The translations under genes were made by a program, and so were the position numbers. Below the pieces are notes generated by a model. That model had not been told where the DNA came from. It did not search any database and saw nothing but the letters and a program-made list of their open reading frames with translations. Positions 1 through 13,799 of a stretch of 64,000 bases of DNA are shown here, one piece after another; within the stretch, counting starts at the first letter, position 1, and every line of letters begins with the position of its first letter. Where the stretch lies: the sequence record NC_016163.1; one strand, written 5' to 3'.

Positions 1-1
1 G

Positions 2-97
2 TTAATTAAGATTGACCCTAGACACTTTTCTGATATAAAAGTTGAAATCATAGGAGGTTTACTCTCTCCTGTTAAACTTTCTCTTAAGGATATATAA
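2..97 (+). CDS. 3' end of an ORF entering from upstream (LIKIDPRHF...LKDI*); the mini-ORF array probably continues beyond the window
   Basis: Open frame from base 2 to TAA at 95-97, 5 nt before the next ATG. Confidence 0.55.
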   Translation, partial: LIKIDPRHFSDIKVEIIGGLLSPVKLSLKDI

Positions 98-102
98 TTA
101 AA

Positions 103-375
103 ATGAAGAAGAATGTATGCGTTATAACTGAAAGAGATGTTGTTCTAGCTAAAAGAAGAAAAGGTTGTAAACTACAAACTGATGTAGATGTAGCTTTAAC
201 TGAAATGAATAATATTCGTTTTGATTTTAGAGTGATAATAAGAAAAGCCTTCAGAAACTTTGAAGAAGAATTTTATTATGTAGATGATTTCATTTGTATA
301 CCAGATAAAGAGGTAATGATTTATCATGAAAATTTTAAAGGCGACCAACCCAAGATGGTTTGCGCAATCCAATAG
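103..375 (+). CDS. small hypothetical protein (MKKNV)
   Basis: Array member; no family recognised. Confidence 0.7.
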   Translation: MKKNVCVITERDVVLAKRRKGCKLQTDVDVALTEMNNIRFDFRVIIRKAFRNFEEEFYYVDDFICIPDKEVMIYHENFKGDQPKMVCAIQ

Positions 376-577
376 TACTTTTTCAAAGTTTGCTATCCGT
401 GGGGCTACAGAGGTATTATCTGATTGGATGGATAATGCCTTTTCAGCATTTTGTCAATTGTATGAGATTCATTATGATGCTGGTAGCTCCCAAGTACCTA
501 AAAGAAAGCTCTTAGTTAAGATTCATCTAAGAACTGTATGGAACTCTTCTAAAATGGTGGATAATGTACATAACTAG
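326..577 (+). CDS. small hypothetical protein (MKILK)
   Basis: Array member. Confidence 0.7.
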   Translation: MKILKATNPRWFAQSNSTFSKFAIRGATEVLSDWMDNAFSAFCQLYEIHYDAGSSQVPKRKLLVKIHLRTVWNSSKMVDNVHN

Positions 578-812
578 ACGGAAAAAGAGGTTTAATACTA
601 CGGTTTATTATAATATCTATCTAGTTCCAGGAAAAATGTTAACTGTTAGAGATAAAAATATATACTCAGTATATAAAATCTTTGAAAAAGAATTAGACTT
701 CAGACTTAATCATTATGATTTCTATATCACTAAAGTTAACGAGAAACCTTATGGTATGTTGATAAGAGAGGTTATAAGAACTCATGAAAACAATAAAAGC
801 GCGTGGTTTTAA
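564..812 (+). CDS. small hypothetical protein (MYITR)
   Basis: Array member. Confidence 0.7.
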   Translation: MYITRRKKRFNTTVYYNIYLVPGKMLTVRDKNIYSVYKIFEKELDFRLNHYDFYITKVNEKPYGMLIREVIRTHENNKSAWF

Positions 813-1002
813 CAAGAATAAAATATTAGATTTAACTCCTATCAAGGAAACTAGAAGATCTGCTATGGACACTCTGATGAGAAGAATACTTTTCATAGAA
901 GTGGACATAAGTAATCATATGCCTAGGCTCCATTTTGATAATTGCAATGGGGCTAAATGGTCAAATTTCATAGCAAATAAATATTATAAGAAAGTTATAT
1001 GA
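784..1002 (+). CDS. small hypothetical protein (MKTIK)
   Basis: Array member. Confidence 0.7.
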   Translation: MKTIKARGFNKNKILDLTPIKETRRSAMDTLMRRILFIEVDISNHMPRLHFDNCNGAKWSNFIANKYYKKVI

Positions 1003-1187
1003 AAATTGTAAGAATTTCCAGGAAAAAAGACAGAGATATTGGCAGACTCATAATAGGTCATATTTTTGCAACCTATAAGGAATTAAAAGGTACTTTATTA
1101 TTCAGATATGACTATATAGGATATAAATGTAAGGTTGAATTACATAGCAATAGGTATGAAAAGATTATAGGGATTGATATATGCTAG
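999..1187 (+). CDS. small hypothetical protein (MKIVR)
   Basis: Array member; ATGA overlap. Confidence 0.7.
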   Translation: MKIVRISRKKDRDIGRLIIGHIFATYKELKGTLLFRYDYIGYKCKVELHSNRYEKIIGIDIC

Positions 1188-1534
1188 TAAGAAAATTCAG
1201 AACTCATGCTAAAGCTGGTAGGATTGAGCAACAGAAAGAAAAATTAAAAATGCTCAAAAATCGGTTGAATAAATTTGATAAAAATAGTAGTCCTTATAGG
1301 ATGAATCTTAGGGCAATCAATAATATTGAAGATTTTTTCATAAGATATGAAAATACTATAAATAGACAATTTTCTGCAGCTATGAGTAAATTCAGAAAGA
1401 TGACTTTACAAGAAACAAATTCAATTTATGCTGATTTTAAAGCAATAGTAGACAATAACTCACCAAATTATAGAGTTTATGCTACTCGTCAAGATTTGAA
1501 ATATATCTACTTTAATAAAGAATCCTTTAAATGA
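1181..1534 (+). CDS. small hypothetical protein (MLVRK)
   Basis: Array member. Confidence 0.75.
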   Translation: MLVRKFRTHAKAGRIEQQKEKLKMLKNRLNKFDKNSSPYRMNLRAINNIEDFFIRYENTINRQFSAAMSKFRKMTLQETNSIYADFKAIVDNNSPNYRVYATRQDLKYIYFNKESFK

Positions 1535-1749
1535 AAACATTTCTAGTATCTAAATACATTCTAAGTCAGATAAATCTAGATGCAAAAGTACAGAAGTCAT
1601 ATAGACGTGAACTTCTTAACTTGTCCAAAATGTATAGAAAAACGATTAAAGTTGATGGTATGGATAAATATATAGTTATTTTAGTACCTGAGACTACTTT
1701 TCCTTTTGTGATATTTGATAAATACAGGCTAGGAAATGAAAATAAATAG
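1531..1749 (+). CDS. small hypothetical protein (MKTFL)
   Basis: Array member; ATGA overlap. Confidence 0.7.
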   Translation: MKTFLVSKYILSQINLDAKVQKSYRRELLNLSKMYRKTIKVDGMDKYIVILVPETTFPFVIFDKYRLGNENK

Positions 1750-1924
1750 AATTTCCAATAATTTTAGGAATCACCCACTACACTATATAGCTGAAAATGC
1801 GTTTATAGATACTAGCGCATGGTCTAAATTCTGCGTAGAATCCCTCCAACACATGCCAAAGTTCAATTATTCATCTGAAATGCGAGCCTTGCAACATTTC
1901 TACTTAAGGATTGTTCCATGCTGA
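1736..1924 (+). CDS. small hypothetical protein (MKINR)
   Basis: Array member; AGGA SD. Confidence 0.7.
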   Translation: MKINRISNNFRNHPLHYIAENAFIDTSAWSKFCVESLQHMPKFNYSSEMRALQHFYLRIVPC

Positions 1925-2166
1925 TAGTAAAGGCTAAAAGAACTTCTTTAGCAGGTTCTAAACAAAGGTCTAGACCTAGTAAGTATTACTTATTAACTAA
2001 ACCTAGGAGTGCATTAAATAGTATAAAAAACGAATTTGATTTAGGTACCTATGAAATGGATGCAGATTATAGTACTATGTATTCGTATACGCACCAAGCT
2101 GTACCTATCTACCCAATAATAATGGAATTGAAAAATGTTGCGAATCCGTTTAGCCGCTGCTACTAA
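1918..2166 (+). CDS. small hypothetical protein (MLIVK)
   Basis: Array member; AAGGA SD. Confidence 0.7.
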   Translation: MLIVKAKRTSLAGSKQRSRPSKYYLLTKPRSALNSIKNEFDLGTYEMDADYSTMYSYTHQAVPIYPIIMELKNVANPFSRCY

Positions 2167-2341
2167 TGCCAGAAAACTTATTTTTCCTACCGGAACGTAT
2201 TCTATAACTTCTAAGCAGGTTAAGGCTAAATTCCTTAGTCACTTTTTAGTGATTAAAGACCATAGCCTTTATTTTTATATTCAGAATTGGCAGATAACTA
2301 GTGTCGTAATATATGATAAGCTGACTCTAAACAAATTCTAA
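2135..2341 (+). CDS. small hypothetical protein (MLRIR)
   Basis: Array member. Confidence 0.6.
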   Translation: MLRIRLAAATNARKLIFPTGTYSITSKQVKAKFLSHFLVIKDHSLYFYIQNWQITSVVIYDKLTLNKF

Positions 2342-2343
2342 GG

Positions 2344-2352
2344 ATATATTAT
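2344..2352 (+). promoter_or_regulatory. early-type phage promoter motif ATATATTAT (representative copy)
   Basis: The same 9-mer lies upstream of genes at 2344, 6620, 21476, 25030, 25695, 30841, 33169, 51058, 52447, 54123, 63409 (+) and 21367-21375 (-); resembles the TATATTA-type early promoters of phiKZ/AR9-like phages. Confidence 0.75.
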
Positions 2353-2385
2353 AATTATAGAATCTTAAGAATTAGGAGTTGTACT

Positions 2386-2595
2386 ATGTACAAAACTAAA
2401 CGCTTTATAGGCGTTAGGCGAAATAATAGGGTTTTCACTAAAGAGTTTAAAAAGACTATAAGAATGACATATGGCCCTAGAGAACTTTTAGATAATTATG
2501 AGATTTCATTCCATATTGAAGTCGATGAGCATAATGCATGCAAAAAGATATGGTTTGGTCTGAAATCTATGAAATATAATAGGAATTGTTTATGA
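2386..2595 (+). CDS. small hypothetical protein (MYKTK)
   Basis: AGGAG SD; first gene after the 2344 promoter motif. Confidence 0.75.
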   Translation: MYKTKRFIGVRRNNRVFTKEFKKTIRMTYGPRELLDNYEISFHIEVDEHNACKKIWFGLKSMKYNRNCL

Positions 2596-2801
2596 TGAGA
2601 TATGCTAGGGTTGTCAGAGATGATCCAGTATTTAGACCTTCTTATAGTCTTTTAAGTTCTTATTTGGTGTACTCTATGAGTATCTATGATTGGAGTTCTA
2701 AATCGTCTTACAAGCTCTTTTATAGAGAAAATATTGCTATCCGAATTCATTGTAGAGAGTTTGATAAACATCCAGAATTTAAAGGGTTTAGTCGATTATG
2801 A
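2592..2801 (+). CDS. small hypothetical protein (MMRYAR)
   Basis: Start moved to the ATG overlapping the previous stop; AGGA SD. Confidence 0.65.
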   Translation: MMRYARVVRDDPVFRPSYSLLSSYLVYSMSIYDWSSKSSYKLFYRENIAIRIHCREFDKHPEFKGFSRL

Positions 2802-3043
2802 AAATTGATAAAACTAGTACTAAACTCACTCTTATAGTACCTGCTTCTGGTATTTATGCTCAAATGGAGTTTATTGATCAGTACATACGTAGTCAAAAGA
2901 TATCTAAAGAATGTATTTCTTATACTCATGCTATTCATGTCTTAATGGAATTAAATGCAGATAAAAGAATATCATATTTTGCTTATAATAGTCGTAGAGG
3001 GGTAAATATCTATACGGGAGACTTTAAATGTATGTCTATATAG
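2798..3043 (+). CDS. small hypothetical protein (MKIDK)
   Basis: Array member; ATGA overlap. Confidence 0.7.
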   Translation: MKIDKTSTKLTLIVPASGIYAQMEFIDQYIRSQKISKECISYTHAIHVLMELNADKRISYFAYNSRRGVNIYTGDFKCMSI

Positions 3044-3264
3044 CTACTAAACGGATGGAAGAATACTCTAAATTACAGGAAGTTAATAGAGATGTAGTAC
3101 TTGAAGCTGGAAGATCACGTTCCTTGTCAGATGTAGCATATTATCGTGCTCAAATGGCTATAAGTATCAGTAGTAAATTTGCAGTTTACGCCAATCTTGA
3201 TAAAATTAATGATGATCGTGTAAGATTTCAGAAAAAGGACTTATATGAAGGTAGAAAGAACTAA
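3028..3264 (+). CDS. small hypothetical protein (MYVYI)
   Basis: Array member; GGAG SD. Confidence 0.7.
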   Translation: MYVYIATKRMEEYSKLQEVNRDVVLEAGRSRSLSDVAYYRAQMAISISSKFAVYANLDKINDDRVRFQKKDLYEGRKN

Positions 3265-3496
3265 AAGAATAACGAAATCTCATAGTATTATAAGTCGATA
3301 TAATGCGCTCCGTCATAATGGAAACCTGAATGGAATTTCACTAAGAGAATTCTTAAATTTCCCTATGGCTCATTCAGGGATGTTTAACCATTTAGCTTTA
3401 ACTCACTTATCTAATCCAGATTTTATAGAAATTATATCTTTTGACCTAGAAGATGAGGAAATATACTTAGGGACATTTAAAGAGATAATGAAATGA
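3245..3496 (+). CDS. small hypothetical protein (MKVER)
   Basis: Array member; AAGGA SD. Confidence 0.7.
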   Translation: MKVERTKRITKSHSIISRYNALRHNGNLNGISLREFLNFPMAHSGMFNHLALTHLSNPDFIEIISFDLEDEEIYLGTFKEIMK

Positions 3497-3750
3497 AAAT
3501 TCATAGAAAACCAAAACGAAAATCTTTTTACTATGATCCGTATCCTAATTATCCATATGAAGACCCCTGTAACTATTTAGATGATAGGAGAGAAATAGTA
3601 TCTCTGTCTAATATAGATCGAGTATTTGCTCGTTCTACTCCTCAAATAATACTTAATAAGCGTATAGAGCTTTTTCTCTACACTGAAAAGTATATCTCTA
3701 GTACACTAGCTATTACTGATATGCTGGATGGTTCAAAATGGTTAAGTTAA
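3493..3750 (+). CDS. small hypothetical protein (MKIHR)
   Basis: Array member; ATGA overlap. Confidence 0.7.
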   Translation: MKIHRKPKRKSFYYDPYPNYPYEDPCNYLDDRREIVSLSNIDRVFARSTPQIILNKRIELFLYTEKYISSTLAITDMLDGSKWLS

Positions 3751-4070
3751 GATTTAAAAAAGATAATACCTTTGGTAAATATGTAGGAGTATATTTACAC
3801 CTATTATCAATTGGTAAGAGGGAAATGATTGATGATAGGAAATCTAAAGATAGTTACGATGAGATCATAAGATATGCTTATGAAGAACAAAATGGTATGT
3901 ATCCTAAGCGAATTCTTGAATTATTAGGAGTATATGAATTTGCTTATACGAGATCAATTTTTGCAATCAAAGGGGAAAGGGGTTGGTCTATTAAGATACG
4001 ACCAAACGAAAAGATTGAATTATCATGGGCGAGATCAGATAATAATGAAGCATATAAAAGACGCATATAG
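3738..4070 (+). CDS. small hypothetical protein (MVKLR)
   Basis: Array member. Confidence 0.7.
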   Translation: MVKLRFKKDNTFGKYVGVYLHLLSIGKREMIDDRKSKDSYDEIIRYAYEEQNGMYPKRILELLGVYEFAYTRSIFAIKGERGWSIKIRPNEKIELSWARSDNNEAYKRRI

Positions 4071-4251
4071 TGTATTAGATCATTACTACCCTCAAAACAT
4101 AGAACATTTGAGAAGAAATATTCTAAATACACAAAAAAATTTTGTCTATAATCTTAAAGATTTAAAGATCATAAATACTAATCTTTTTGTAGTTGAGAGA
4201 TATAATGGTAAAATAGGTATTCAGCAAATTCGTATAAGGTTTATATTATGA
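4045..4251 (+). CDS. small hypothetical protein (MKHIK)
   Basis: Start moved from 3934 to 4045 to remove a long overlap. Confidence 0.6.
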   Translation: MKHIKDAYSVLDHYYPQNIEHLRRNILNTQKNFVYNLKDLKIINTNLFVVERYNGKIGIQQIRIRFIL

Positions 4252-4526
4252 AGATAGCTAATTATCCTAAATCTAAAAAAGCTCTAAGAGGTGATCCTCA
4301 TGTATCATTTATACATAGATTAGAGATTAGTGATGGTTTTAGGTATACTCTTAAGAATACTTTAATTCAAAAGTTTATTCTGGAAGATCTTGTTGATTTA
4401 CCAAAATTTCTCAAAGAAGAATATATAGAAATAGATTCTCGTCTAGATGGAGATTCATTAGTATTTATCAAGTATAAAAGGCTTAAAGATGTTCATACTT
4501 TCAAAGGCTGTGAAATCAATATATAG
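4248..4526 (+). CDS. small hypothetical protein (MKIAN)
   Basis: Array member; ATGA overlap. Confidence 0.7.
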   Translation: MKIANYPKSKKALRGDPHVSFIHRLEISDGFRYTLKNTLIQKFILEDLVDLPKFLKEEYIEIDSRLDGDSLVFIKYKRLKDVHTFKGCEINI

Positions 4527-4725
4527 TAATCAATTAATGACTTTACGTCATGATAAGCTAGCTAAAAGAGTTTCCGCAATTCCTAAGATGAAAGAAAGTT
4601 TAGTAGAGTTTGAGGGGCTATATTGTGATGTAATGGTAAAAGTTGCAATATATCATGACCATCCAGTTTATGGTATGACTTTCTTACAGAAATATTCATT
4701 TTTCCAGGAGGGTAAGTTTGTATAA
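4489..4725 (+). CDS. small hypothetical protein (MFILS)
   Basis: Array member. Confidence 0.65.
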   Translation: MFILSKAVKSIYSNQLMTLRHDKLAKRVSAIPKMKESLVEFEGLYCDVMVKVAIYHDHPVYGMTFLQKYSFFQEGKFV

Positions 4726-4927
4726 GCGATGCATAATGAAAGCTGAACTTCCAGAGTATGGTTCAATAAAATCAGTATTCGAAGAAGGACGTTTAAGCGT
4801 AAAACAGCAATTAAAAGTTAAATATTCTTTTGCCCATCATCCAGATAAGTACTTAGGAATTAACAATGCTGCCTTCAAATTAGATGATGGATTCGAAGTA
4901 TTAGTTTTTAAGGGTATGTTTAAATGA
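4718..4927 (+). CDS. small hypothetical protein (TTG start)
   Basis: GAGGG SD; array member. Confidence 0.65.
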   Translation: MYKRCIMKAELPEYGSIKSVFEEGRLSVKQQLKVKYSFAHHPDKYLGINNAAFKLDDGFEVLVFKGMFK

Positions 4928-5181
4928 AAGTAAAGAAAAACCTAATACGTCGGTACGATTATGATAGTATTATGGCTTTAGAAAAGGATCCAGATAACGT
5001 AATACGTCAAAGAGTTTTAAATCATGAAAGAAACGAGAAGAAATTTGTAAATAAAATGGAAAGCCAAGTAATTAGTTCATGCTTTCCAGATTTACTGCAT
5101 TCAATGGCGGTTATTATTTATTATCGTTCACCATATTCTTTCGGGGCTTGTTTTCAACTATGTAAAGCTGATATACAATGA
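4924..5181 (+). CDS. small hypothetical protein (MKVKK)
   Basis: Array member; ATGA overlap. Confidence 0.7.
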   Translation: MKVKKNLIRRYDYDSIMALEKDPDNVIRQRVLNHERNEKKFVNKMESQVISSCFPDLLHSMAVIIYYRSPYSFGACFQLCKADIQ

Positions 5182-5405
5182 GAAAATATAGAAAGTCATC
5201 ATTCACATTTGTAGAGGATTTTGTAGCAAAGGATATGGCAATGATATCCGAAATACAAAGTATGATATCCTGTATGAATGGATTTGATTTAGTTCTAGGT
5301 TTTGGAGAAACTAAAATGCTCTACTACCAACGTATAGGATTTGATACATATTTTGAATTAAAGACCTCTGAAGAAATGAAAATGCTTAATAAGAGGGTTG
5401 TGTAA
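5178..5405 (+). CDS. small hypothetical protein (MRKYR)
   Basis: Array member; ATGA overlap. Confidence 0.7.
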   Translation: MRKYRKSSFTFVEDFVAKDMAMISEIQSMISCMNGFDLVLGFGETKMLYYQRIGFDTYFELKTSEEMKMLNKRVV

Positions 5406-5608
5406 TGAAACATATTAAACAACATTGGACTAATGTTAACTTTGAATGGTATATCAACAGATATTCTGGAACGGATTATACTGGTACATTTTCTGAGATT
5501 AGAGGATTAATTCATAGTGTAAAATCTCTTGAGTTAGGGAAGCCTGTACCTCTAATGTGTGAGAATCATACTGCATACAAAATGTATGGAACGAGCGTTA
5601 AATCATGA
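5405..5608 (+). CDS. small hypothetical protein (MKHIK)
   Basis: Array member; TAATG overlap. Confidence 0.7.
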   Translation: MKHIKQHWTNVNFEWYINRYSGTDYTGTFSEIRGLIHSVKSLELGKPVPLMCENHTAYKMYGTSVKS

Positions 5609-5799
5609 TAAGAGTGACTTATCCCTTCCCTATGGAAGAAGATGCGCAAACTAATAAACATATAACCCATTTAGGTACTATCTATAATGTAGGAAGATTA
5701 ATTGAATCTAAAGAAATATGGATAGATATAAAAATTGTATCTAAAGGTTGTGCAGGTATACTGATTGATATTAAGGAAACCCTCAAATGCGAGTCCTAA
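5605..5799 (+). CDS. small hypothetical protein (MIRVT)
   Basis: Array member; ATGA overlap. Confidence 0.65.
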   Translation: MIRVTYPFPMEEDAQTNKHITHLGTIYNVGRLIESKEIWIDIKIVSKGCAGILIDIKETLKCES

Positions 5800-6092
5800 A
5801 ACTTGATATGAGACCTGATGACTATAGAGAAGAATATCGTAAAAATTATATAACTGTAAGTATATTAGAAGAGCTTGATAAATCCTACAAAGCTAATTTA
5901 TTTAAACTTTCTCCAATAAATGATGTATTAAAAGGTAATTTCTTTAGTATCATATGCGGTATACGTGATGAATTTACTGATGTTCATCCAAAATACTATT
6001 TACAATATACCTATTCTAATCAAAAATGGGGTATGTATATAAAGAATAAAGATTATTCTGCCAGATTCTACGAAAACGATGGAGTATGGTAA
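5787..6092 (+). CDS. small hypothetical protein (MRVLK)
   Basis: Array member. Confidence 0.7.
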   Translation: MRVLKLDMRPDDYREEYRKNYITVSILEELDKSYKANLFKLSPINDVLKGNFFSIICGIRDEFTDVHPKYYLQYTYSNQKWGMYIKNKDYSARFYENDGVW

Positions 6093-6343
6093 TGAAGACT
6101 TATAGATTCAATAAATACCATCCTAATGCAGATTTAGATAGATTGAAGTATGACTCATTTAAAATAAATACTGAGATACAATGGATAAATATTGGATGTC
6201 TTTTAGAAAGTTTATTTATTCTGTATGACCCGCCAGATGAAGAAGATATCAAAGATTATCTTGTGTTACCGCTATTCATTTACTTCATAACACGTCCAAA
6301 TAATCTATCTGTATATAAAATGAGATCATTTAAATGCATGTAA
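6092..6343 (+). CDS. small hypothetical protein (MKTYR)
   Basis: Start at the TAATG overlap. Confidence 0.7.
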   Translation: MKTYRFNKYHPNADLDRLKYDSFKINTEIQWINIGCLLESLFILYDPPDEEDIKDYLVLPLFIYFITRPNNLSVYKMRSFKCM

Positions 6344-6579
6344 CTAGATGGCGTAGCCCAGGAGAAAATTTCCTGATGGCATGTTTTAGTTTTAAAGCCA
6401 ATGGTATAAGAAAAAGAATAATAAAGAGATATAATGAAGTTTATAGAGGCGATTGCATCTTTTTAGACAACTCTATTATGCGTAATCAATGTAAAATAGG
6501 ATTTGCAAGAAGTCCTATTTGCTCCACATTCTTAATAGATTCTTCCAGCAATAATCCTTTTCTACATTTTATATTTTAA
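6334..6579 (+). CDS. small hypothetical protein (MHVTR)
   Basis: Array member, followed by a terminator. Confidence 0.65.
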   Translation: MHVTRWRSPGENFLMACFSFKANGIRKRIIKRYNEVYRGDCIFLDNSIMRNQCKIGFARSPICSTFLIDSSSNNPFLHFIF

Positions 6580-6582
6580 AGA

Positions 6583-6615
6583 AAAGGTTCTCAAAAGAGA
6601 ACCTACTCTTTTTTT
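6583..6615 (+). terminator. intrinsic terminator
   Basis: aggttctc-aaaa-gagaacct stem followed by a T-rich run. Confidence 0.7.
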
Positions 6616-6647
6616 ATTGATATATTATATTAATGGAGGAATCTCTA

Positions 6648-6905
6648 ATGAGAATACATCGTATAACTGGAAGGTTCGATAATTTAGGTTTAGACCCTGT
6701 AGGAACATGGATATTTAGAATTTACAGAGAGATTAAAAACACATATGAGTATAATATCAATATGGTTCCTGATCTCAGTTTTCTCATAGCTAATGCAAAT
6801 GATGATTTGAATCCTGTAAGATCAATTGATAGTTATCATTTAGCTAGACTCTTTATAGAGAGTGATCGAAGGATTAAGAATAAAAGTATCATAACTTATA
6901 TGTGA
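6648..6905 (+). CDS. small hypothetical protein (MRIHR)
   Basis: GGAGG SD before the ATG at 6648. Confidence 0.75.
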   Translation: MRIHRITGRFDNLGLDPVGTWIFRIYREIKNTYEYNINMVPDLSFLIANANDDLNPVRSIDSYHLARLFIESDRRIKNKSIITYM

Positions 6906-6913
6906 GGATTGAT

Positions 6914-7273
6914 ATGATAATCTTCAAAGCAAGGAAGTGTAATCATTTTAATAATAGTTCTCAATTAAATTTTGCTATAGAAGCTCATCGTAGAGTTACC
7001 ATTTCAGGTAACTATGAAATGCTTAGATCTAATCTCAAGATTAGTTCATGTTTTCCTGAAGCATTTCAAGTTAAGCTTTATCCAGATAGTACTCCTCGCC
7101 AAGATGATCGTATGTTTATAGATGAAATGCTTGATATGGGAATATGTGATTTCCATGTTTTATTCATTTCAGGTGAGAGAAGATTAACGACGTACTTGTG
7201 GTGTCCACTAATAAATATAAAGGCTCATTATGTTCAAGACCAAGCTTCCAAAGAAATTATATCCTTCTATTAA
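6914..7273 (+). CDS. small hypothetical protein (MIIFK)
   Basis: GAGGA SD before the ATG at 6914. Confidence 0.7.
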   Translation: MIIFKARKCNHFNNSSQLNFAIEAHRRVTISGNYEMLRSNLKISSCFPEAFQVKLYPDSTPRQDDRMFIDEMLDMGICDFHVLFISGERRLTTYLWCPLINIKAHYVQDQASKEIISFY

Positions 7274-7772
7274 ACATCAGTGGTTTTTACAGATTGATAA
7301 ACTTTTTGATATTATGTATGAAAGGGATAAACTACTAAATCTTGCTAGAGAAACCTGCCTCATTCTCGAACCAATTATGTTACATACTTATACTAGCAAA
7401 AAGATAGTTCATCAATTTGATAATATCCCGTATAATACTTTTATTGTAAGAAAACCTATTTTAACAGGCGTAGATTTTGCTGCAGGAATGGATTATGATG
7501 GTGATGTAATGTCATATTATAGTCATAACTTTTTATATGGCCATCTTGGTGATCCGCTTCAAATGTATCCTTCTATTAAAAGAATGGTAGAATATAAAAA
7601 CTATTCTACTACTAAACTAGATAGAAAAGGTAAAATTCAGTTTGAATTACCTCCTAAAGAGCTTTCAAAAATCTATGGAACTAGATATAAGGATATACCT
7701 CTTGCTGGAGGAAATATTTTAGATACATTTGATATTCCGGTAAAAAATCATCATGTATTCATTCCACAATAA
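7230..7772 (+). CDS. hypothetical protein containing a GVDFAAGMDYDGD segment
   Basis: 180-aa ORF; the motif appears without the rest of an enzyme. Confidence 0.7.
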   Translation: MFKTKLPKKLYPSIKHQWFLQIDKLFDIMYERDKLLNLARETCLILEPIMLHTYTSKKIVHQFDNIPYNTFIVRKPILTGVDFAAGMDYDGDVMSYYSHNFLYGHLGDPLQMYPSIKRMVEYKNYSTTKLDRKGKIQFELPPKELSKIYGTRYKDIPLAGGNILDTFDIPVKNHHVFIPQ

Positions 7773-7781
7773 TGGATTAAT

Positions 7782-8063
7782 ATGAAAATAACAGTTCTTG
7801 GCCCTGATTGGATGGGGTTATTAGATGAATATTTAGACCATAAAGGGAAACCTAGTGTCTATTCTGATTTAGAAAACCTTGCAACTACTTTGTATCGTTT
7901 ATCTAGATTTCTAGTATTAGTGCATAGTGAATCTGTAGCAGGGTTGCACCCCTATTCCCCTCGTATTTTCTTTGAATATGAATATTCTCTTGAAAGAGCA
8001 TTAAATTCAACTGACCCTAACGGTTTTCCTATAAGAGTCATAGCTAAAAAGGATTCTAGTTAA
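7782..8063 (+). CDS. small hypothetical protein (MKITV)
   Basis: Array member. Confidence 0.7.
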   Translation: MKITVLGPDWMGLLDEYLDHKGKPSVYSDLENLATTLYRLSRFLVLVHSESVAGLHPYSPRIFFEYEYSLERALNSTDPNGFPIRVIAKKDSS

Positions 8064-8428
8064 TGTATATTAATAAGCTTACTGTAGTACTATTTCACGA
8101 TCTAAGCCCTTACGGATATCCGGCATTTATTTCAGATAAAAAACTACGAGAAAGAATTTGTAATAAGTTAACTGTAAAAGTAGCTTCAATTGTTTATCGT
8201 GGAGCCGTTTCCGTTAAAATCTTTAATGCCAAAGATTTAGGTTCTTTGCAAGAAATCTTATCTGGTAAGAAAGGGTTTATACGCAAAAATGATATAGCTT
8301 ATGAATTACTTATCGAAACCATGTTCATAGTAGAAAGTGATTTACCTCGTTATAAAGGAACTAGAACAATTACTTTTTCCGATCCTATAGTAAAACAGAT
8401 TGAGGATTTTAAGAATGAAATTTGTTAA
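8063..8428 (+). CDS. small hypothetical protein (MYINK)
   Basis: Array member; TAATG overlap. Confidence 0.75.
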   Translation: MYINKLTVVLFHDLSPYGYPAFISDKKLRERICNKLTVKVASIVYRGAVSVKIFNAKDLGSLQEILSGKKGFIRKNDIAYELLIETMFIVESDLPRYKGTRTITFSDPIVKQIEDFKNEIC

Positions 8429-8825
8429 ATTTCGTGAGAATGTGGAATACGAAAATAATTCATTCAGAGTTGTCGTTATGAAATGTTTTCCGCATGAAGT
8501 AATTACTAATAATGGAGTAAGAATAGACAATCCTAGGCAGTTTAGAGAGGACGGCACTGTTCCAATTTCTACCAATCTCTCCCATCTATTTTTCATAAAT
8601 AGATCATTTAGCAGAGAATTGTATAAACTTTCTGGCGGTTTTGAAATTGAGTCTAATTTCAATAATGATGAAGGATCTGATGATGAAAACTTTGCCCTTA
8701 TGGAATCTTCATATTTAGATCTACCTATTAAATTGAAATTATATTTTGAAGATAGAAGTATACTTTTATCTATGCTTTTAGAAGAATATCATAATATAAA
8801 AATACCGTTAAGGTTTTTGAAATGA
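8415..8825 (+). CDS. small hypothetical protein (MKFVK)
   Basis: GAGGA SD before the ATG at 8415. Confidence 0.75.
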   Translation: MKFVKFRENVEYENNSFRVVVMKCFPHEVITNNGVRIDNPRQFREDGTVPISTNLSHLFFINRSFSRELYKLSGGFEIESNFNNDEGSDDENFALMESSYLDLPIKLKLYFEDRSILLSMLLEEYHNIKIPLRFLK

Positions 8826-9064
8826 AAATTTTTAGAACGGATAGCAAAATATCAAAATGTGATAGCAGAAGAACTGATTTATTAAATAGGATATTCAAGA
8901 AATATACATTAAATTCATTATGTAACAATTATGAAAAGCATTTATTAGCTTTTGATTTTAATGATTTCTCAAGAACTTCTATGTTTGTAGAAAGTCGGAT
9001 ATACGCCGATGTAAATACTATGGTATTTTACCGATATTATGGTTATCTACATGAAAAAGACTAA
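8822..9064 (+). CDS. small hypothetical protein (MKIFR)
   Basis: Array member; ATGA overlap. Confidence 0.7.
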   Translation: MKIFRTDSKISKCDSRRTDLLNRIFKKYTLNSLCNNYEKHLLAFDFNDFSRTSMFVESRIYADVNTMVFYRYYGYLHEKD

Positions 9065-9326
9065 ATTTGATAGTAAACGTCATATGGAAAGTTTTCTTTA
9101 TAATTCAAGAACCACAAGATGGGTCTTAGAGGATAAATTATTTGAACATATAGCCGATATCGTAGCTAGGATAAAATACCTTGATAGCATCATTATTAGT
9201 ATAGGTCGTATAAATTTCGTGCCGACTAATTTAAAGAAGGAAAACAATAATAACGAAAAAATACTACTGATGTTTAAGGTGGATAATAATTTTGAAAAAT
9301 TAGCCCGTATAAGGATAAATAAATGA
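9051..9326 (+). CDS. small hypothetical protein (MKKTK)
   Basis: Array member; start uncertain (9039 or 9051). Confidence 0.65.
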   Translation: MKKTKFDSKRHMESFLYNSRTTRWVLEDKLFEHIADIVARIKYLDSIIISIGRINFVPTNLKKENNNNEKILLMFKVDNNFEKLARIRINK

Positions 9327-9568
9327 TTCATCAAAGATGGAGTAGTACATACTTGAAAGCAAAAAGAAATCCAGGAATGTCAGCTATAAATTATAGAGCT
9401 TTGGATGCCCTAACTCATCGCATAAGAACCGATTTCACTTTACACTTTGAAAAAGGCGATGCTGAATGTACTGAATTTAATGAAGGTAGTAATGATAAAA
9501 GTTTTTATATAGAAACTGACGGTATATTTTTTAATTCTATTTCTAATAAGTCATTAAAGGGACTATAG
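9323..9568 (+). CDS. small hypothetical protein (MIHQR)
   Basis: Array member; ATGA overlap. Confidence 0.7.
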   Translation: MIHQRWSSTYLKAKRNPGMSAINYRALDALTHRIRTDFTLHFEKGDAECTEFNEGSNDKSFYIETDGIFFNSISNKSLKGL

Positions 9569-9870
9569 TGAAATCTATTTTACGTTATAACGAAGACATT
9601 GAATTAGCAGTAAAAGGTGCTAGAAACAATCTTCAGGCAACATTTAAATTCACTCTTATGTCTAGTAGTTTAACTGAACTTTATGATAAGCAGTATCCTT
9701 ATGGAATAGATATAAAAGTAGAGAAACCTTTTGAATTAAACAATTTTGTTGGAAGGGGAATGTCTTCTATATCAAACTACTTTGTAGACATGGATGTTAA
9801 CCTTATGTATCCAAATGTATTACAAAGTTATGATCCTTCGCATTTAACGGAGAAGAAATTTTATATATGA
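9568..9870 (+). CDS. small hypothetical protein with a PolB motif-A-like segment (VDMDVNLMYPNVL)
   Basis: GTG start with AAGGGA SD. Confidence 0.7.
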   Translation: MKSILRYNEDIELAVKGARNNLQATFKFTLMSSSLTELYDKQYPYGIDIKVEKPFELNNFVGRGMSSISNYFVDMDVNLMYPNVLQSYDPSHLTEKKFYI

Positions 9871-10124
9871 GAAAAGTTACCAATGAAGATAAAATAAAAA
9901 TATCTTTTGATGATTTAGAGTATATGGTAGAAAGCGTTAATATAAAGAAAAATTTACTTCGTATGTCACCTAGCTTTAATATTTCTCCATTACTACAAGG
10001 ATTACATATAGCTTCACAAGCATTAGGAAAAAGTATGCAGAAAGGCAGTTTCTTAATAATTGATGAAGCTCCATTCTTACCACAAGAAATTCCTAAAGTA
10101 GAATATTTCTATGAAAATCATTAG
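9867..10124 (+). CDS. small hypothetical protein with a Walker-B-like segment (FLIIDEAPFLP)
   Basis: Array member; ATGA overlap. Confidence 0.7.
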   Translation: MRKVTNEDKIKISFDDLEYMVESVNIKKNLLRMSPSFNISPLLQGLHIASQALGKSMQKGSFLIIDEAPFLPQEIPKVEYFYENH

Positions 10125-10377
10125 TAGAAAAATAAGTATGGCGGCTTTCCCAGACATGGATAGAAAATACTTATTTGATGCATTATTTAGCGATCAGCCC
10201 AAACTAAATTTAAATTCCGATGTTTTATCTTTTGTAGATTTAAGAAAAGGATTTATTTTGAGTATGATTCAAGGAGGATTAGACGGATTTATGAATTTAT
10301 GGGTTAAAAGTCTAGGAGTAGCGGCTTTTTTAGAGAAGAAAATGTACTATGAAAGTAGAAAAAAGAACATCATATGA
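10111..10377 (+). CDS. small hypothetical protein (MKIIS)
   Basis: Array member. Confidence 0.7.
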   Translation: MKIISRKISMAAFPDMDRKYLFDALFSDQPKLNLNSDVLSFVDLRKGFILSMIQGGLDGFMNLWVKSLGVAAFLEKKMYYESRKKNII

Positions 10378-10558
10378 TTCATCTGTAATGCCTTCATGGA
10401 GCTTTATTCATAAGTATATAAGATATACTTTATTATGTCGTAAAGAAAAAGCCATGTTTTGTAGGGTGCGAACCCCTACAATCCAAGAAGTACCTTCTAC
10501 CTATGCATTACCGGAAGAGACATTTATTAATGTCATATTTGCAGATTACAAATGGTGA
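10349..10558 (+). CDS. small hypothetical protein (MKVEK)
   Basis: Array member. Confidence 0.65.
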   Translation: MKVEKRTSYDSSVMPSWSFIHKYIRYTLLCRKEKAMFCRVRTPTIQEVPSTYALPEETFINVIFADYKW

Positions 10559-10561
10559 TTT

Positions 10562-10948
10562 ATGAAAATTAGGAAAGAGAAAATATCAGAACCTACTGAA
10601 GATGTATATGGTGGATTTGTAAATACTTTATCTATATTCAAAAATGTACTTAATTCATTAAAAAAGAAAGAAAATAAAACCTTTACTAGATCAGAATTTC
10701 ATAGTGAAGTTGGCAGCAGTATAGATTTTTTAGAATTTGACAATATTTATAAAGCATTAGATATAAGAACATCTTTACCTGAAGTACTAGGTAAAGAAAT
10801 GGATAAAGTATTTCATTCGCTTCTTTCATCAACAGGTATTATGAGTCCTTTCTTCAATACTTCTCTTCCAAAATTATGGAATAGTACTAAAATAAATAAA
10901 GATATTTTCTCTACTACAATATTATATGAAAATAATAAAAGTAAGTAA
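10562..10948 (+). CDS. small hypothetical protein (MKIRK)
   Basis: Array member. Confidence 0.75.
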   Translation: MKIRKEKISEPTEDVYGGFVNTLSIFKNVLNSLKKKENKTFTRSEFHSEVGSSIDFLEFDNIYKALDIRTSLPEVLGKEMDKVFHSLLSSTGIMSPFFNTSLPKLWNSTKINKDIFSTTILYENNKSK

Positions 10949-11177
10949 AATTAAAGCATTGACAGAAATGCATAGGGATAGATATCGCTCTTCGGGATAT
11001 GAAAAAAGAACAATCTTTACCTATTTCCTTGATGAAGCTACTATAGGATTACGTGAACATCTCTCTAATATTGATAGATTAGAATTGACATGTAGAAGTA
11101 AGAAAATATTCTCGCCTTTTTACGATAAGTATATTGGAACGGAGAATTTTAGAGTAGTATTTATCGAGGGTAATTAA
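10926..11177 (+). CDS. small hypothetical protein (MKIIK)
   Basis: Array member. Confidence 0.7.
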   Translation: MKIIKVSKIKALTEMHRDRYRSSGYEKRTIFTYFLDEATIGLREHLSNIDRLELTCRSKKIFSPFYDKYIGTENFRVVFIEGN

Positions 11178-11446
11178 TGTATATACATTATCAAGGAATG
11201 GACAGAACTTACGTTTTATCCAACCGTAAAATGCTTTATGAACTAAAAAATAAAGTATTTAGATTAAGTTTTTTAAATGATACAGTTAGAGGTATTGAAG
11301 ATCATACTGACTTCTGTTTAGTTATAACTCATTTTAAAATTGATAAGCCTATCAGAGTTAAAAGATTAAGAGGCTGTCTCTTTATGGTAGTAGAGACTCG
11401 TATTTCTAAAAGCATTAATCTTAGAAATATCTTAAAAAAAGAGTAG
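11177..11446 (+). CDS. small hypothetical protein (MYIHY)
   Basis: Last array member; GAGGG SD. Confidence 0.7.
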   Translation: MYIHYQGMDRTYVLSNRKMLYELKNKVFRLSFLNDTVRGIEDHTDFCLVITHFKIDKPIRVKRLRGCLFMVVETRISKSINLRNILKKE

Positions 11447-11547: not shown

Positions 11548-12654
11548 ATGATGTCTTTAACCAGTCTTCTATTAGAAGATGATAACGATGTTCTGTATAA
11601 AAATCCTCTTATGAAAGTAAAGAAACCTTATAAGTTTTATGGTGTATCCAACTATAAAGCTATTCAGGAAATTCTTTCATCGGGAGTGATTGATGCATCA
11701 CAATATCGTCTAAGAACAGATAAAGCTTATAGAGCTAATGATGCAGTATACTTTACAGATGATCTAGGAAGAGCATTTAACTGGTACGCTACTAAGCGTT
11801 CAGATGCCTTCAATGATTTATCTGGTAAGGATGCATTTGTATTTGTAATTAATCCAGATTATATTAACTGGAGCGAGGTCTACTTTGATGAAGCCGACTT
11901 CTATATTGCAGTACTAGGCGTTCTAGTATACAAAATGAATCAGGGTGAGAAACTTGAAAAGAAAGCTATTGAAACTAAGATTTCAGTAGATGAAAACAAT
12001 AACCTCAATATCCGAACTAAAGTAGATATTCATGCCAACCCACTAGCTAATAAGGTTTGGGAGCTTGCATTTAATACCGCTGGCAAGATTATCTCTGGAA
12101 AGGTGAGTACTATAGCTACACCTTTATTTGATATTCTTCGAAATGCTGATATTGATTTAAATGATCTTGTTAAGATTTCTTATGGTGTTAAGGCTAATAC
12201 GTATAAGAATATTCCTATGCGTTATAATAAACCTGAGTCATTCAATAAAGCTCTCAATATGTTTGATAAGCTTTATTCAAAAGATAAAGAGTTTGTTAAA
12301 TGGGTGGAAGAAATGAAGCTAGATATCCTAGCCGAAATGCCTCCCTACCAACTTAAAGCAAAAAATATCTTGATTGCTAAAAAGATTTCCCATCAATATC
12401 AGAAAATGCTATTGAAATTTATTAAAGAATTCTGCTCAAGCTTTGCATATAAAGGTAAACTTAATGTAATGGGATACTTCTCAGGTGATAGGGAAGCATT
12501 ATCTCTTGAAGTAGTTCAGAAAAAAATTGAGCATATCTCAGATAGATATCTTAAAACTACTGAACAAGACCATGCTATCAATGATTATATGAAACAATTT
12601 AATAAAAATAGTCTAGGTATCAAGTTTACTCTTCTTCAAAATAAAGGTGTATAA
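11548..12654 (+). CDS. ADP-ribosyltransferase-like fold protein, probably virion-associated
   Basis: KFYGVS..AIQEILSSG..AVYFTDD..AF.WYA resembles the ART HGT..I..G..vYft..A..YA pattern (His not conserved); late promoter. Confidence 0.45.
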   Translation: MMSLTSLLLEDDNDVLYKNPLMKVKKPYKFYGVSNYKAIQEILSSGVIDASQYRLRTDKAYRANDAVYFTDDLGRAFNWYATKRSDAFNDLSGKDAFVFVINPDYINWSEVYFDEADFYIAVLGVLVYKMNQGEKLEKKAIETKISVDENNNLNIRTKVDIHANPLANKVWELAFNTAGKIISGKVSTIATPLFDILRNADIDLNDLVKISYGVKANTYKNIPMRYNKPESFNKALNMFDKLYSKDKEFVKWVEEMKLDILAEMPPYQLKAKNILIAKKISHQYQKMLLKFIKEFCSSFAYKGKLNVMGYFSGDREALSLEVVQKKIEHISDRYLKTTEQDHAINDYMKQFNKNSLGIKFTLLQNKGV

Positions 12655-13723: not shown

Positions 13724-13799
13724 AATAACCCATACCCCTTTTTTAGGGATATAGGTTAAACTCTGAACACGCTTATAGCAGATTATAAAGGTAAAACAA

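What the first reader, a model, noticed from the sequence alone, without database searches (positions are those of the whole stretch)
103..11446. Array of about 44 coupled mini-proteins sharing an N-terminal M-x-[IVT]-x-[KR] signature
Seen: ORFs of about 60-180 aa tile 11.3 kb with start/stop overlaps and share no obvious similarity except their first residues (MKILK, MYITR, MKTIK, MKIVR, MKINR, MLIVK, MKIDK, MKVER, MKIHR, MRVLK, MKTYR, MHVTR, MRIHR, MYINK, MKIFR, MKVEK, MKIRK, MKIIK and others). By my count about 30-32 of 44 have K/R at residue 5, usually with a beta-branched residue 3. About six starts were chosen by me from SD or overlap, which could inflate the count. The long enzymes in the window mostly lack the pattern. 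Inference: a shared docking beta-strand, targeting tag or degron addressing a large early effector library to one partner, or the last trace of a hyper-diversified paralog family.
Basis: partly seen in the sequence, partly recalled or inferred. Interest (0 to 1): 0.8.

Follow-up and report, generated by a model that had tools for sequence, protein, structure and literature searches.

The report
Shared N-terminal tag on phage early mini-proteins
A block of 44 (really 74) tiny, unrelated, fast-evolving early genes of the giant Yersinia phage phiR1-37 almost all start with the same five-residue pattern (Met, Lys, Ile/Val/Thr, any residue, Lys/Arg), which natural selection preserves in the protein and which is absent from other phages tested, so it looks like a common address label or handle whose reader is still unknown.

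Summary
The window is bases 1-64000 of Yersinia jumbo phage phiR1-37, and the finding covers annotated genes g001-g044. K/R is at residue 5 in 29/44, [IVT] at residue 3 in 29/44, and K/R at residue 4 in only 3/44; K/R at residue 5 is 24% in the other 293 genes (p=7e-8). A mechanical 'first ATG' caller gives the same picture. The array is larger than reported: 74 genes, g338-g044, about 19 kb, mostly early transcripts. The pattern is not explained by AT bias (T4 small early genes 14%, AR9 9%), by overlap with the upstream stop codon, by weak Shine-Dalgarno sites, or by start choice (internal Met control 1/152). It replicates in three divergent uncultured relatives (L019, L025, L026), where array proteins are a median 36-45% identical (L025, L026; 28-64% in L019) while flanking genes are 90-100% identical. 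Selection acts on the peptide: replacements in codons 2-6 are 22% versus 32% in the body, synonymous changes are not reduced, K/R swaps occur, and Lys far exceeds Asn. No array-wide paralogy is detectable. The best reading is a peptide-level N-terminal signal shared by unrelated early proteins, with reader and function unknown. An early-elongation effect is the main rival.

The parts
103..11446 (+). g001-g044: 44 tiled small genes (62-180 aa, median about 83). This is the right-hand 60% of a 74-gene early array that continues upstream across the record origin (g338-g367, record 254582-262391 plus 1-97).
   Evidence: Annotation; upstream part; RNA-seq Table S2 of PMC4848604 marks most of them EARLY; 0/73 PHROG hits.
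326..340 (+). Example of the start module, g002: ATG AAA ATT TTA AAG = M-K-I-L-K. The same five-codon pattern (Met, Lys, Ile/Val/Thr, x, Lys/Arg) opens 21 of the 44 genes strictly and 29 of 44 at residue 5.
   Evidence: codon 2 AAA/AAG 38/74; codon 3 ATA/ATT/ATC/GTA; codon 5 AAA 21, AGA 14, AAG 6 of 74.
2340..2364 (+). Annotated promoter ahead of g011 (verified by RNA-seq according to Table S2).
6581..6640 (+). Annotated rho-independent terminator (6581-6608) and promoter (6616-6640) between g028 and g029. These are the only internal transcription signals annotated in the 11 kb.
5605..8825 (+). g025-g034: the best-conserved syntenic core of the array. Orthologs in the same order occur in a relative only 28-40% identical, and residue 5 stays basic in 6 of the 7 that have it.
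   Evidence: L018 and L019.
7230..7772 (+). g031 (180 aa), the largest member. It starts MFKTK, and Lys5 is invariant in homologs down to 34% identity. It also carries an invariant D[FY]DGD motif.
4045..4251 (+). Probable true g018, starting at the internal ATG (MKHIK) instead of the annotated 3934, which overlaps g017 by 137 nt.
   Evidence: An independent gene call in relative L008 uses this start; sequence.
15305..17031 (-). g050-g054: a second, smaller cluster of small genes with the same signature (MVRIK, MVIFK, MKIYK, MKIVK). It evolves faster than its neighbours.
   Evidence: identities 53-72% versus 87-100% for g049 and g055; dN/dS 0.18.
11548..14438 (+). g045-g048: conserved virion-protein genes that bound the array on the right. 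They lack the signature and serve as the yardstick for divergence.
   Evidence: 83-98% identical in L019 and L026 (g045-g047 90-93% in L025), where array genes are 28-64% (L019) or a median 36-45% (L025, L026) identical; dN/dS 0.03-0.04.

Best explanation
The region is most of a roughly 19 kb, 74-gene array of small soluble early proteins at the left end of the phiR1-37 genome. The proteins are unrelated to each other and to anything known. They turn over quickly in evolution: whole genes are gained and lost, dN/dS is about 0.3, and alleles form a mosaic. About two thirds of them carry the same N-terminal signal: a retained initiator Met, Lys (or another bulky residue) at position 2, Ile/Val/Thr at 3, usually a hydrophobic residue at 4, Lys/Arg at 5 (sometimes 6), no acidic residue in positions 2-6, and a net charge of about +2 over the first ten residues.

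I read this as a peptide-level N-terminal signal kept independently on each gene. It would be a common handle that one factor reads on otherwise unrelated early proteins. The most concrete candidate reader is an N-terminal recognition site of a host AAA+ protease or chaperone, as with the ClpX N-degron of the lambda O early protein. That would make these early proteins short-lived, so their action ends once early transcription falls.

Shown: the signature, its restriction to this gene class and this phage lineage, its conservation at the amino-acid level, and the early timing of the transcripts.
For: Real and class-specific: 66% and 53% K/R at residue 5 in the two halves of the array versus 24% elsewhere. 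The other clusters that carry it (g219-223, g252-257, g317-322) are also mostly EARLY.

Lineage-specific, not compositional: T4 small early genes 14%, AR9 (27% GC) 9%.

Replicated with independent or mechanical gene calls in three divergent arrays: L019 63% (pipeline calls) or 51% (mechanical caller), L025 48%, L026 54%. This includes 10/14 L019 genes with no phiR1-37 homolog.

Peptide-level selection:
- Codon 5 has AAR 27 versus AAY 3 (p=4e-5) and AGR 14 versus AGY 1; GAA and GAT are both 0. The AAG share among Lys codons equals the body share.
- In orthologs, residue 5 stays the same in 39 pairs, swaps K/R in 12 and is lost in 3. Basic charge is kept through AGA to CGG and AAA to CGA.
- Codons 2-6 show replacements of 22% versus 32% in the body (p=5.5e-6), while synonymous change is 16% versus 19% (p=0.16).

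Tag-like: no shared pattern beyond about residue 9; no cross-family profile similarity; the initiator Met is predicted to be kept in 72/74 versus 167/293 elsewhere; no membrane segments.

Not a ribosome-binding-site compensation: SD energy is equal in genes with and without the motif, and local mRNA folding is equal.

Precedents: T-even internal proteins are diverse anti-defence proteins sharing only an N-terminal targeting sequence (PMC3012670). N-terminal ClpX degrons include that of the phage early protein lambda O (PMC12723719 and PMC9775585).
Against: - No partner, half-life or localisation data exist.
- The signal is degenerate: strict form 46%; K/R at residue 5 or 6 in 70%.
- The full ClpX N-motif-1 core ([T/hydrophobic]-hydrophobic-basic-hydrophobic) is present in only 18% of array proteins, no more than in other small phiR1-37 proteins at 17%.
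- Positions 2-5 are exactly the window where codon and nascent-peptide identity affect early elongation in E. coli (PMC6920384). Amino-acid-level selection therefore does not by itself exclude a translational role.
- A first, less clean set of ortholog pairs did show reduced synonymous change in codons 2-6.
- Both structure predictions failed, so it is unknown whether the N-terminus is exposed.
Confidence: 0.4

Rival explanations
1. Early-elongation or initiation 'ramp'. The first five codons (AUG AAA AUH NNU ARA), together with the nascent Met-Lys-Ile-x-Lys/Arg peptide, are kept because they let ribosomes clear the start efficiently on long, translationally coupled early transcripts. The pattern would then serve expression and would have no role in the finished protein.
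For: - It is locked to codons 2-5, the window known to change yield by orders of magnitude in E. coli. Lys/Asn followed by Ile/Tyr motifs are the best, KIH is among the top tripeptides, and both nucleotide and amino-acid identity contribute (PMC6920384).
- K-I or K-Y at codons 2-3 occurs in 26% of array genes versus 4-8% in controls.
- A at +4 to +7 is 54-70% and U at +8 is 62%.
- Among small genes the pattern is commoner in coupled ones (40% versus 21% outside the array).
- One ortholog set showed lower synonymous change in codons 2-6.
Against: - At the positions where the published motif was defined (codons 3-4 and 4-5) it occurs in 4% of array genes, no more than in controls at 5-13%.
- Asn, equivalent to Lys in that motif, is excluded here: residue 2 has K 38 and N 1; codon 5 has AAR 27 and AAY 3.
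- A basic residue 5 is not part of the published motif. It is often encoded by AGA, a rare codon in enterobacteria that, by established knowledge (not tested here), lowers expression near the start.
- The pattern is absent from T4 early genes, which use the same kind of ribosome, and from phiR1-37's own other genes, including its most highly transcribed ones.
- There is no link to SD strength or mRNA folding.
- Synonymous sites are not significantly constrained in the clean ortholog set.
Confidence: 0.3
2. Vestige of common descent. The array grew by duplication and very fast divergence, and the N-terminus is the last recognisable remnant of one ancestral mini-protein.
For: - The pattern is lineage-specific.
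- The size range is narrow (median 84.5 aa, interquartile range 76-93).
- Three local duplications are detectable once orthologs are pooled: g355 with g363, g359 with the adjacent L008/L017 gene, and two g016-like genes in L019.
- Bodies diverge fast enough (dN 0.58 versus L019) to erase old similarity.
Against: - Profiles of 65 ortholog families score other families like reversed decoys: 38 versus 36 hits above 8 bits, and 31 versus 27 with the N-terminus masked.
- There are no runs of motif-bearing genes (37 runs versus 36.3 expected), and adjacent genes do not have more similar N-terminal peptides or codons than random pairs.
- No shared hydrophobic register exists beyond residue 9.
- Descent alone would not keep residues 2-6 better conserved than the body. 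Selection is still needed, which leads back to the other two explanations.
Confidence: 0.12
3. Artefact of annotation, base composition or gene overlap. Starts chosen to look alike, AT-rich codons, or the upstream stop codon lying across codons 4-5 would create the pattern.
For: - The genome is 30% GC.
- Many genes overlap by 4-14 nt.
- Six annotated starts differ from the longest ORF.
Against: - The mechanical first-ATG caller gives 55% versus 27%.
- The internal-Met control gives 1/152.
- AR9 at 27% GC gives 9% and T4 gives 14%.
- All overlap classes show the pattern.
- Independent pipeline gene calls in L019 give 63%.
Confidence: 0.02
4. Recombination joint. The conserved start region would be a micro-homology used to shuffle gene cassettes, like the promoter and stem-loop cassettes of T4-type hyperplastic regions.
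For: The array is a mosaic. Per-gene synonymous divergence against L008 ranges from 0.02 to 0.74 between neighbouring genes, and whole genes are gained and lost.
Against: - Nucleotides upstream of the ATG are not conserved between phiR1-37 and L019 (16-58% identity, no peak). Conservation starts at the ATG and is at the amino-acid level.
- Two deletion junctions examined fall inside genes, not at starts.
- Only two promoters and one terminator are annotated in 11 kb.
Confidence: 0.04

Closest known systems
Capsid targeting sequence (CTS) of T-even phage internal proteins
   Same: A set of highly diverse, fast-evolving small phage proteins that share nothing but a short N-terminal peptide read by one partner (PMC3012670).
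   Different: The CTS is about 10 residues, ends at a prohead-protease site, and sits on late, virion-packaged proteins. Here the signature is about 5 residues and acidic residues are excluded, whereas the phage's protease cuts after Glu in its capsid protein (LQE|S). The genes are early, and none is marked as a virion protein in the record.
N-terminal ClpX recognition signals (N-motif-1 such as lambda O TNTAKI; N-motif-2 such as OmpA MKKTA, IscS MKLPI)
   Same: Both lie at the extreme N-terminus, have a basic residue 3-6 residues in that is preceded by Thr or hydrophobic residues, and lack acidic residues. Lambda O is itself a phage early protein. Examples here: MK-TIKA, MK-IVRI, ML-IVKA.
   Different: The full four-residue core is present in only 18% of array proteins and is not enriched over other small phiR1-37 proteins. 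In the N-motif-1 examples the Met is removed, whereas here it is predicted to be kept. Degradation was not tested.
Early-elongation 'translational ramp' motifs of E. coli (K|N-Y|I, AAVAUU and AADUAU; Verma et al. 2019)
   Same: Position-locked to the first five codons, with a Lys-Ile start and both codon and amino-acid contributions.
   Different: The pattern here is shifted by one codon, Asn is excluded, a basic residue 5 is added, and it is restricted to one gene class of one phage lineage.
Hyperplastic regions of T4-type phages and early-gene arrays at the ends of other large phages
   Same: Dense clusters of small early ORFans between conserved modules, with gene gain and loss between close relatives (PMC2839356 and PMC4122927).
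   Different: T4's small early genes lack the N-terminal signature (14%). The phiR1-37 array has no repeated promoter and stem-loop cassettes, and its genes are translationally coupled.

Membership tests
T4-type capsid targeting sequence proteins | A short conserved N-terminal peptide on otherwise unrelated proteins | tested here: met
   A five-residue degenerate signature in 46% (strict) to 70% (K/R at residue 5 or 6) of 74 non-homologous proteins.
T4-type capsid targeting sequence proteins | The tag ends at a prohead-protease cleavage site | tested here: not met
   This phage's capsid protein is cut after Glu (LQE|S). Asp and Glu are 0-5% at residues 2-6 and never exceed 20% at any of the first 30 positions.
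T4-type capsid targeting sequence proteins | Late expression and presence in the virion | tested here: not met
   Most are EARLY by RNA-seq. None of g001-g044 carries the record's 'phage structural protein' note, whereas g045-g048 do.
ClpX N-terminal degrons (N-motif-1 and N-motif-2) | Core [Thr/hydrophobic]-hydrophobic-basic-hydrophobic within about 6 residues of the N-terminus, or Met-basic-hydrophobic-hydrophobic | tested here: inconclusive
   The N-motif-1-like core is in 18% of the array versus 17% of other small phiR1-37 proteins, 4% in T4 and 3% expected internally. Met-basic-hydrophobic-hydrophobic is in 30% versus 10%, 8% and 0%.
ClpX N-terminal degrons (N-motif-1 and N-motif-2) | ClpXP-dependent degradation conferred by the tag | not testable with these tools
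   Needs half-life measurements in wild-type and clpX or clpP deletion laboratory strains.
E. coli early-elongation ramp motif (Verma 2019) | K|N-Y|I dipeptide (AAVAUU or AADUAU) at codons 3-4 or 4-5 | tested here: not met
   4% of array genes versus 5-13% in controls at those positions. The motif is enriched only one codon earlier (26% versus 4-8%), and K outnumbers N 38 to 1.
E. coli early-elongation ramp motif (Verma 2019) | Raises protein yield independently of initiation and mRNA folding | not testable with these tools
   Only indirect evidence: no relation to SD energy or local folding energy.
Paralogous multigene family | Significant sequence or profile similarity between members | tested here: not met
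   phmmer all-versus-all finds none. Sixty-five family profiles against pooled sequences score the same as reversed decoys, apart from missed positional orthologs and three local duplicates. Neighbours are not more alike than random pairs.
T4-type hyperplastic region with PeSL cassettes | Variable small early ORFs between conserved modules | tested here: met
   Gene content differs among phiR1-37, L008, L017 and L009. Array identity is 28-64% in L019 (median 36-45% in L025 and L026) next to flanks at 90-100%.
T4-type hyperplastic region with PeSL cassettes | Each ORF or small group flanked by a conserved early promoter and stem-loop cassette | tested here: not met
   Two promoters and one terminator are annotated in 11.3 kb. 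No conserved nucleotides lie upstream of the starts.

The most novel reading that the evidence does not exclude
phiR1-37-like phages mark a large, rapidly renewing library of unrelated early proteins (over 100 families across the four arrays seen) with a minimal N-terminal address: retained Met, Lys, a beta-branched residue, any residue, then a basic residue, with no acidic residues. A single dedicated reader, host or phage encoded, would recognise it and so sort, time or destroy the whole early proteome as a set. Any new gene that lands in the array would have to acquire the address to work. This would be a new kind of viral protein-addressing system.
Probability: 0.2. Interest if true: 0.85.

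Novelty: new variant of a known kind. Interest (0 to 1): 0.62.

Why it matters
Small early phage proteins are where host-takeover and anti-defence functions are found, and they are almost always unannotatable ORFans. Here more than a hundred such families in four related phages share one short feature that is conserved at the protein level. This gives:
- an experimental handle on the whole set (one peptide, one pull-down, one reporter);
- a practical rule for finding true starts and further members, for example g018, g036 and g012;
- a test case for whether viruses address or time sets of unrelated effectors through a minimal N-terminal code, or whether early-elongation constraints can imprint a lineage-specific peptide signature.

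Either outcome would be informative about how new phage genes become expressible and functional.

Tried and rejected
- **Overlap artefact** (upstream stop across codons 4-5): rejected, because all overlap classes show the pattern.
- **AT bias or a generic small-early-gene effect:** rejected by the T4 and AR9 controls.
- **Start-choice artefact:** rejected by the mechanical caller, the internal-Met control and independent pipeline calls.
- **Compensation for weak SD or for structured mRNA:** rejected.
- **C-terminal 'FKG/EG' similarity:** I noticed it by eye and attributed it to the embedded Shine-Dalgarno site of the next gene, but it did not stand out in the C-anchored profile.
- **Nucleus-import signal:** dropped, because phiR1-37 has no chimallin (10.1101/2023.02.24.529968).
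- **Membrane 'positive-inside' signal:** no hydrophobic segments.
- **Recombination joint:** no conserved upstream nucleotides.
- **hhalign all-versus-all of 65 family profiles:** timed out twice, and a background run died. I replaced it with HMMER profiles plus decoys.
- **AlphaFold on the g031 and g034 families:** pLDDT 36 and 40, unusable. No fold search was therefore run.
- **Other searches:** the PDB profile search for g031 found nothing significant. IMG/VR held only phiR1-37 itself. Contigs of the 42-48% relatives end just upstream of the g045 homolog, so their arrays could not be read.
- **Literature:** my searches found no description of this signature. The 2012 genome paper is not in the searchable library, so prior mention there cannot be excluded.

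Full report
**What the sequence is.** The window is bases 1-64000 of Yersinia enterocolitica phage phiR1-37 (AJ972879.2 / NC_016163.1; 262,391 bp; 100% identity). This is a jumbo phage with uracil-containing DNA. Prichard et al. 2023 list it as having multisubunit RNA polymerases but no chimallin (10.1101/2023.02.24.529968). The finding's coordinates hold exactly the 44 annotated genes g001-g044. The region is 29-31% GC.

**Check of the observation.**
- K/R is at residue 5 in 29/44, I/V/T at residue 3 in 29/44, K/R at residue 2 in 26/44, and K/R at residue 4 in only 3/44. K+R make up 14% of the protein bodies.
K/R at residue 5 is 66% in g001-g044, 53% in g338-g367 and 24% in the other 293 genes (Fisher p=7e-8).
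- The array does not begin at position 103. The same tiling of small + strand genes continues upstream across the record origin (g338-g367), giving 74 genes over about 19 kb. The annotated physical left end of the genome lies inside g352.
- Smaller clusters elsewhere also carry the pattern: g050-g054 inside this window, and g219-225, g254-257 and g317-324.
- The published RNA-seq table classes most of these genes as EARLY (PMC4848604 Table S2).

**Artefacts excluded.**
1. *Start choice.* After internal Met residues of the same proteins, the two-feature pattern occurs 1/152 times, against 34/74 at the true N-termini. A purely mechanical caller (first ATG, greedy overlap removal) reproduces 341/347 annotated stops and gives 55% in the array against 27% in other small genes.
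2. *Gene overlap.* The pattern is present at ATGA overlaps (56%), 1-nt overlaps (78%), overlaps over 17 nt (69%) and, at a lower rate, with no overlap (40%).
3. *Base composition or a general property of small early genes.* With the same caller, 74 small genes of the T4 early region (34% GC, an enterobacterial host) give 14%, or 4% for both features. Forty-seven small genes of Bacillus phage AR9 (27% GC, the nearest cultured clade at 33% capsid identity) give 9% and 0%.
4. *Weak ribosome-binding sites or mRNA structure.* SD pairing energy is the same in genes with and without the motif (-4.77 versus -4.61 kcal/mol). Array SDs are, if anything, stronger than elsewhere, and local folding energy does not differ.

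**Anatomy of the signature.** In the 74 array proteins:
- Residue 2 is K/R in 58% (K 38, F 8, Y 8, R 5, N 1).
- Residue 3 is hydrophobic in 62% (I/V/T in 69%), and residue 4 is hydrophobic in 58%.
- Residue 5 is K/R in 61%.
- Asp and Glu are 0-5% at residues 2-6.
- K/R runs at 24-27% at residues 7-9.
- Net charge of residues 2-10 is +1.95, against +0.23 to +0.40 in the control sets.
- Beyond about residue 9 no position differs from background.
- Residue 2 blocks Met removal in 72/74, against 167/293 elsewhere, and none of the proteins has a membrane-like segment.
- If the basic residue may sit at 5 or 6, 70% qualify.

**Nucleotide or peptide?**
- At codon 5 there are AAA 21, AGA 14, AAG 6 and CGT 2. 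Lys codons outnumber Asn codons 27:3, although AAT is as common as AAA in the bodies (p=4e-5). AGR outnumbers AGY 14:1. GAA and GAT are absent. The AAG share among Lys codons equals that in the bodies.
- In orthologs from relatives, residue 5 is unchanged in 39 comparisons, swaps K/R in 12, and is lost in 3 (all Arg CGT to Cys TGT). Arg is kept through AGA to CGG in g015, and basic charge through AAA to CGA in g359.
- A first pooled comparison showed both replacement and synonymous differences reduced in codons 2-6. With pairs centred on phiR1-37 only (no double counting), replacements are 22.0% in codons 2-6 against 32.0% in the body (p=5.5e-6), while synonymous differences are 16.1% against 19.3% (p=0.16). 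The result is the same whether or not the upstream frame overlaps those codons.
- The constraint is therefore mainly on the peptide.

**Relatives and evolution.** No isolate other than phiR1-37 matches at the DNA level, and IMG/VR holds only phiR1-37. Protein searches found uncultured relatives:
- L008 and L017 are close relatives whose arrays differ by whole-gene gains and losses (for example g006-008, g011, g016-030 and g035-043 are absent). Their ortholog identities run from 50% to 100%.
- L009 and L018 are short fragments.
- L019, L025 and L026 are full arrays of 46, 23 and 48 genes.

In the last three, the flanking virion genes g045-g047 are 90-98% identical to phiR1-37. The array genes, largely in conserved order, are 28-64% identical in L019 and a median 36-45% in L025 and L026, and 14/46, 13/23 and 8/48 have no detectable homolog.

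By the Nei-Gojobori method, array genes have dN/dS of 0.28-0.34 against 0.03-0.04 for the flanks. Per-gene synonymous divergence against L008 jumps between 0.02 and 0.74 in neighbouring genes, so the array is a recombinational mosaic of old alleles under weak but real purifying selection.

The signature replicates in every array. K/R at residue 5 is 63% in L019 with the pipeline's own calls, and 51%, 48% and 54% in L019, L025 and L026 with the mechanical caller. K/R at residue 4 stays near 10%. Ten of the 14 L019 genes with no phiR1-37 homolog have it. At 28-40% identity (L018), residue 5 stays basic in 6 of the 7 orthologs that have it in phiR1-37, and the two that lack it lack it in both phages.

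**Is it a paralog family?**
- phmmer all-versus-all finds no significant pair within the array, and 0/73 proteins hit PHROGs.
- After pooling orthologs into 65 families, HMMER profiles of each family score members of other families no better than reversed decoys: 38 versus 36 hits above 8 bits, and 31 versus 27 with the first 8 residues removed. The few real hits are syntenic orthologs that BLAST had missed, or three local duplications.
- Motif-bearing genes are not clustered (37 runs versus 36.3 expected). Adjacent genes are no more alike in N-terminal peptide or codons than random pairs.
- AlphaFold on the two best-sampled families gave pLDDT 36 and 40, so a shared fold could not be tested.
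- Common descent is therefore unsupported but not excluded. It could not by itself explain why residues 2-6 stay conserved.

**Mechanism.** The evidence fits a short peptide-level N-terminal signal maintained gene by gene on unrelated, mostly early, fast-evolving proteins. Two known precedents show how such a signal can work.
- The capsid targeting sequence is the only shared feature of the diverse T-even internal proteins (PMC3012670).
- The N-terminal ClpX degrons have examples such as lambda O TNTAKI, GapA TIKV, OmpA MKKTA and IscS MKLPI, which resemble MK-TIKA, MK-IVRI and ML-IVKA here (PMC9775585 and PMC12723719).

Membership fails or is inconclusive for both. The array proteins are early, non-virion and lack a protease site. 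The full ClpX core occurs in only 18% of them, no more than in other small phiR1-37 proteins. I therefore commit only to 'a common N-terminal handle read by one factor, most plausibly a protease or chaperone that limits the life of early proteins', at confidence 0.4.

The main rival (0.3) is an early-elongation effect of the nascent Met-Lys-Ile peptide and its codons (PMC6920384). Several points count against it:
- The published motif is not enriched at its defined positions (4%).
- Asn is excluded here, and a basic residue 5 is not part of that motif.
- T4 and the phage's own other genes lack the pattern.
- Synonymous sites are not constrained.

**Verdict.** I found no description of this signature in the searchable literature. 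The 2012 genome paper could not be searched.

Noticed in passing
window 7230-7772 (g031); L006 32738-34096 (g274): The g031 family has an invariant D[FY]DGD motif (GMDYDGDVMSYY). The only other phiR1-37 protein with it is g274, an RNA-polymerase beta'-type subunit (GADYDGDVLNFI). A profile comparison aligns the catalytic-loop region weakly (score 27.6, E=0.003, probability 10%). This may be a small early protein carrying an RNA-polymerase active-site-like loop.
   Followed up: partly
L003 41582-49391 plus window 1-97 (g338-g367): The small-gene array continues upstream across the record origin. The annotated physical left end of the linear genome (record 258670) lies inside g352, in the middle of the array.
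   Followed up: yes
window 15305-17031, minus strand (g050-g054): A second cluster of five small genes has the same N-terminal signature and diverges much faster (53-72% identity in L019 and L026) than its neighbours g049 (97-100%) and g055 (87-90%).
   Followed up: partly
window 3934-4251 (g018), 9039-9326 (g036), 2592-2801 (g012): Annotated starts are probably wrong. Internal ATGs at 4045, 9051 and 2595 give MKHIK, MKKTK and MRYAR. The one at 4045 removes a 137-nt overlap with g017 and is the start called independently in relative L008.
   Followed up: partly
L008, L017, L009 versus window 103-11446: Close relatives differ by whole-gene gains and losses (for example g006-008, g011, g016-030 and g035-043 are absent). 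One gene present in L008 and L017 but not phiR1-37 (L008 1044-1292, MKISK) is a diverged duplicate of its neighbour g359.
   Followed up: yes
L012-L016 (first 100-460 bases): Five independent metagenome assemblies of a relative with 48% identity to g045 all break just upstream of the g045 homolog, where the array would begin. This suggests population-level hypervariability or a genome end there.
   Followed up: no
L010 4696-6401: In a relative associated with Proteus mirabilis (42% identity to g045), the position next to PhoH that holds g050-g054 in phiR1-37 holds an Acb1-family gene (anti-CBASS nuclease family) and two GmrSD_N-domain genes. This fits the slot being used for defence and counter-defence cargo.
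   Followed up: no
PMC4848604 text versus its Table S2: The RNA-seq paper states there is no link between genomic location and temporal class. Its own table, in the parts read, marks most of g339-g366 and g001-g043 as EARLY, which would be well over half of its 92 early genes in one 19 kb block.
   Followed up: partly
window 2147-2149 (g010 codon 5), 6660-6662 (g029 codon 5): The only two independent losses of the basic residue 5 among close relatives are Arg CGT to Cys TGT. These are C-to-T transitions at the two members that use a CGT codon instead of AGA or AAA.
   Followed up: no
L004 4659-5117 (record 67659-68117, just outside the window): The phage encodes tRNA-Arg(UCU) and a tRNA with anticodon CAU. 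AGA (14/74 at codon 5) and AUA (15/74 at codon 3) are the commonest Arg and Ile codons in the start module and are rare codons in enterobacteria.
   Followed up: no
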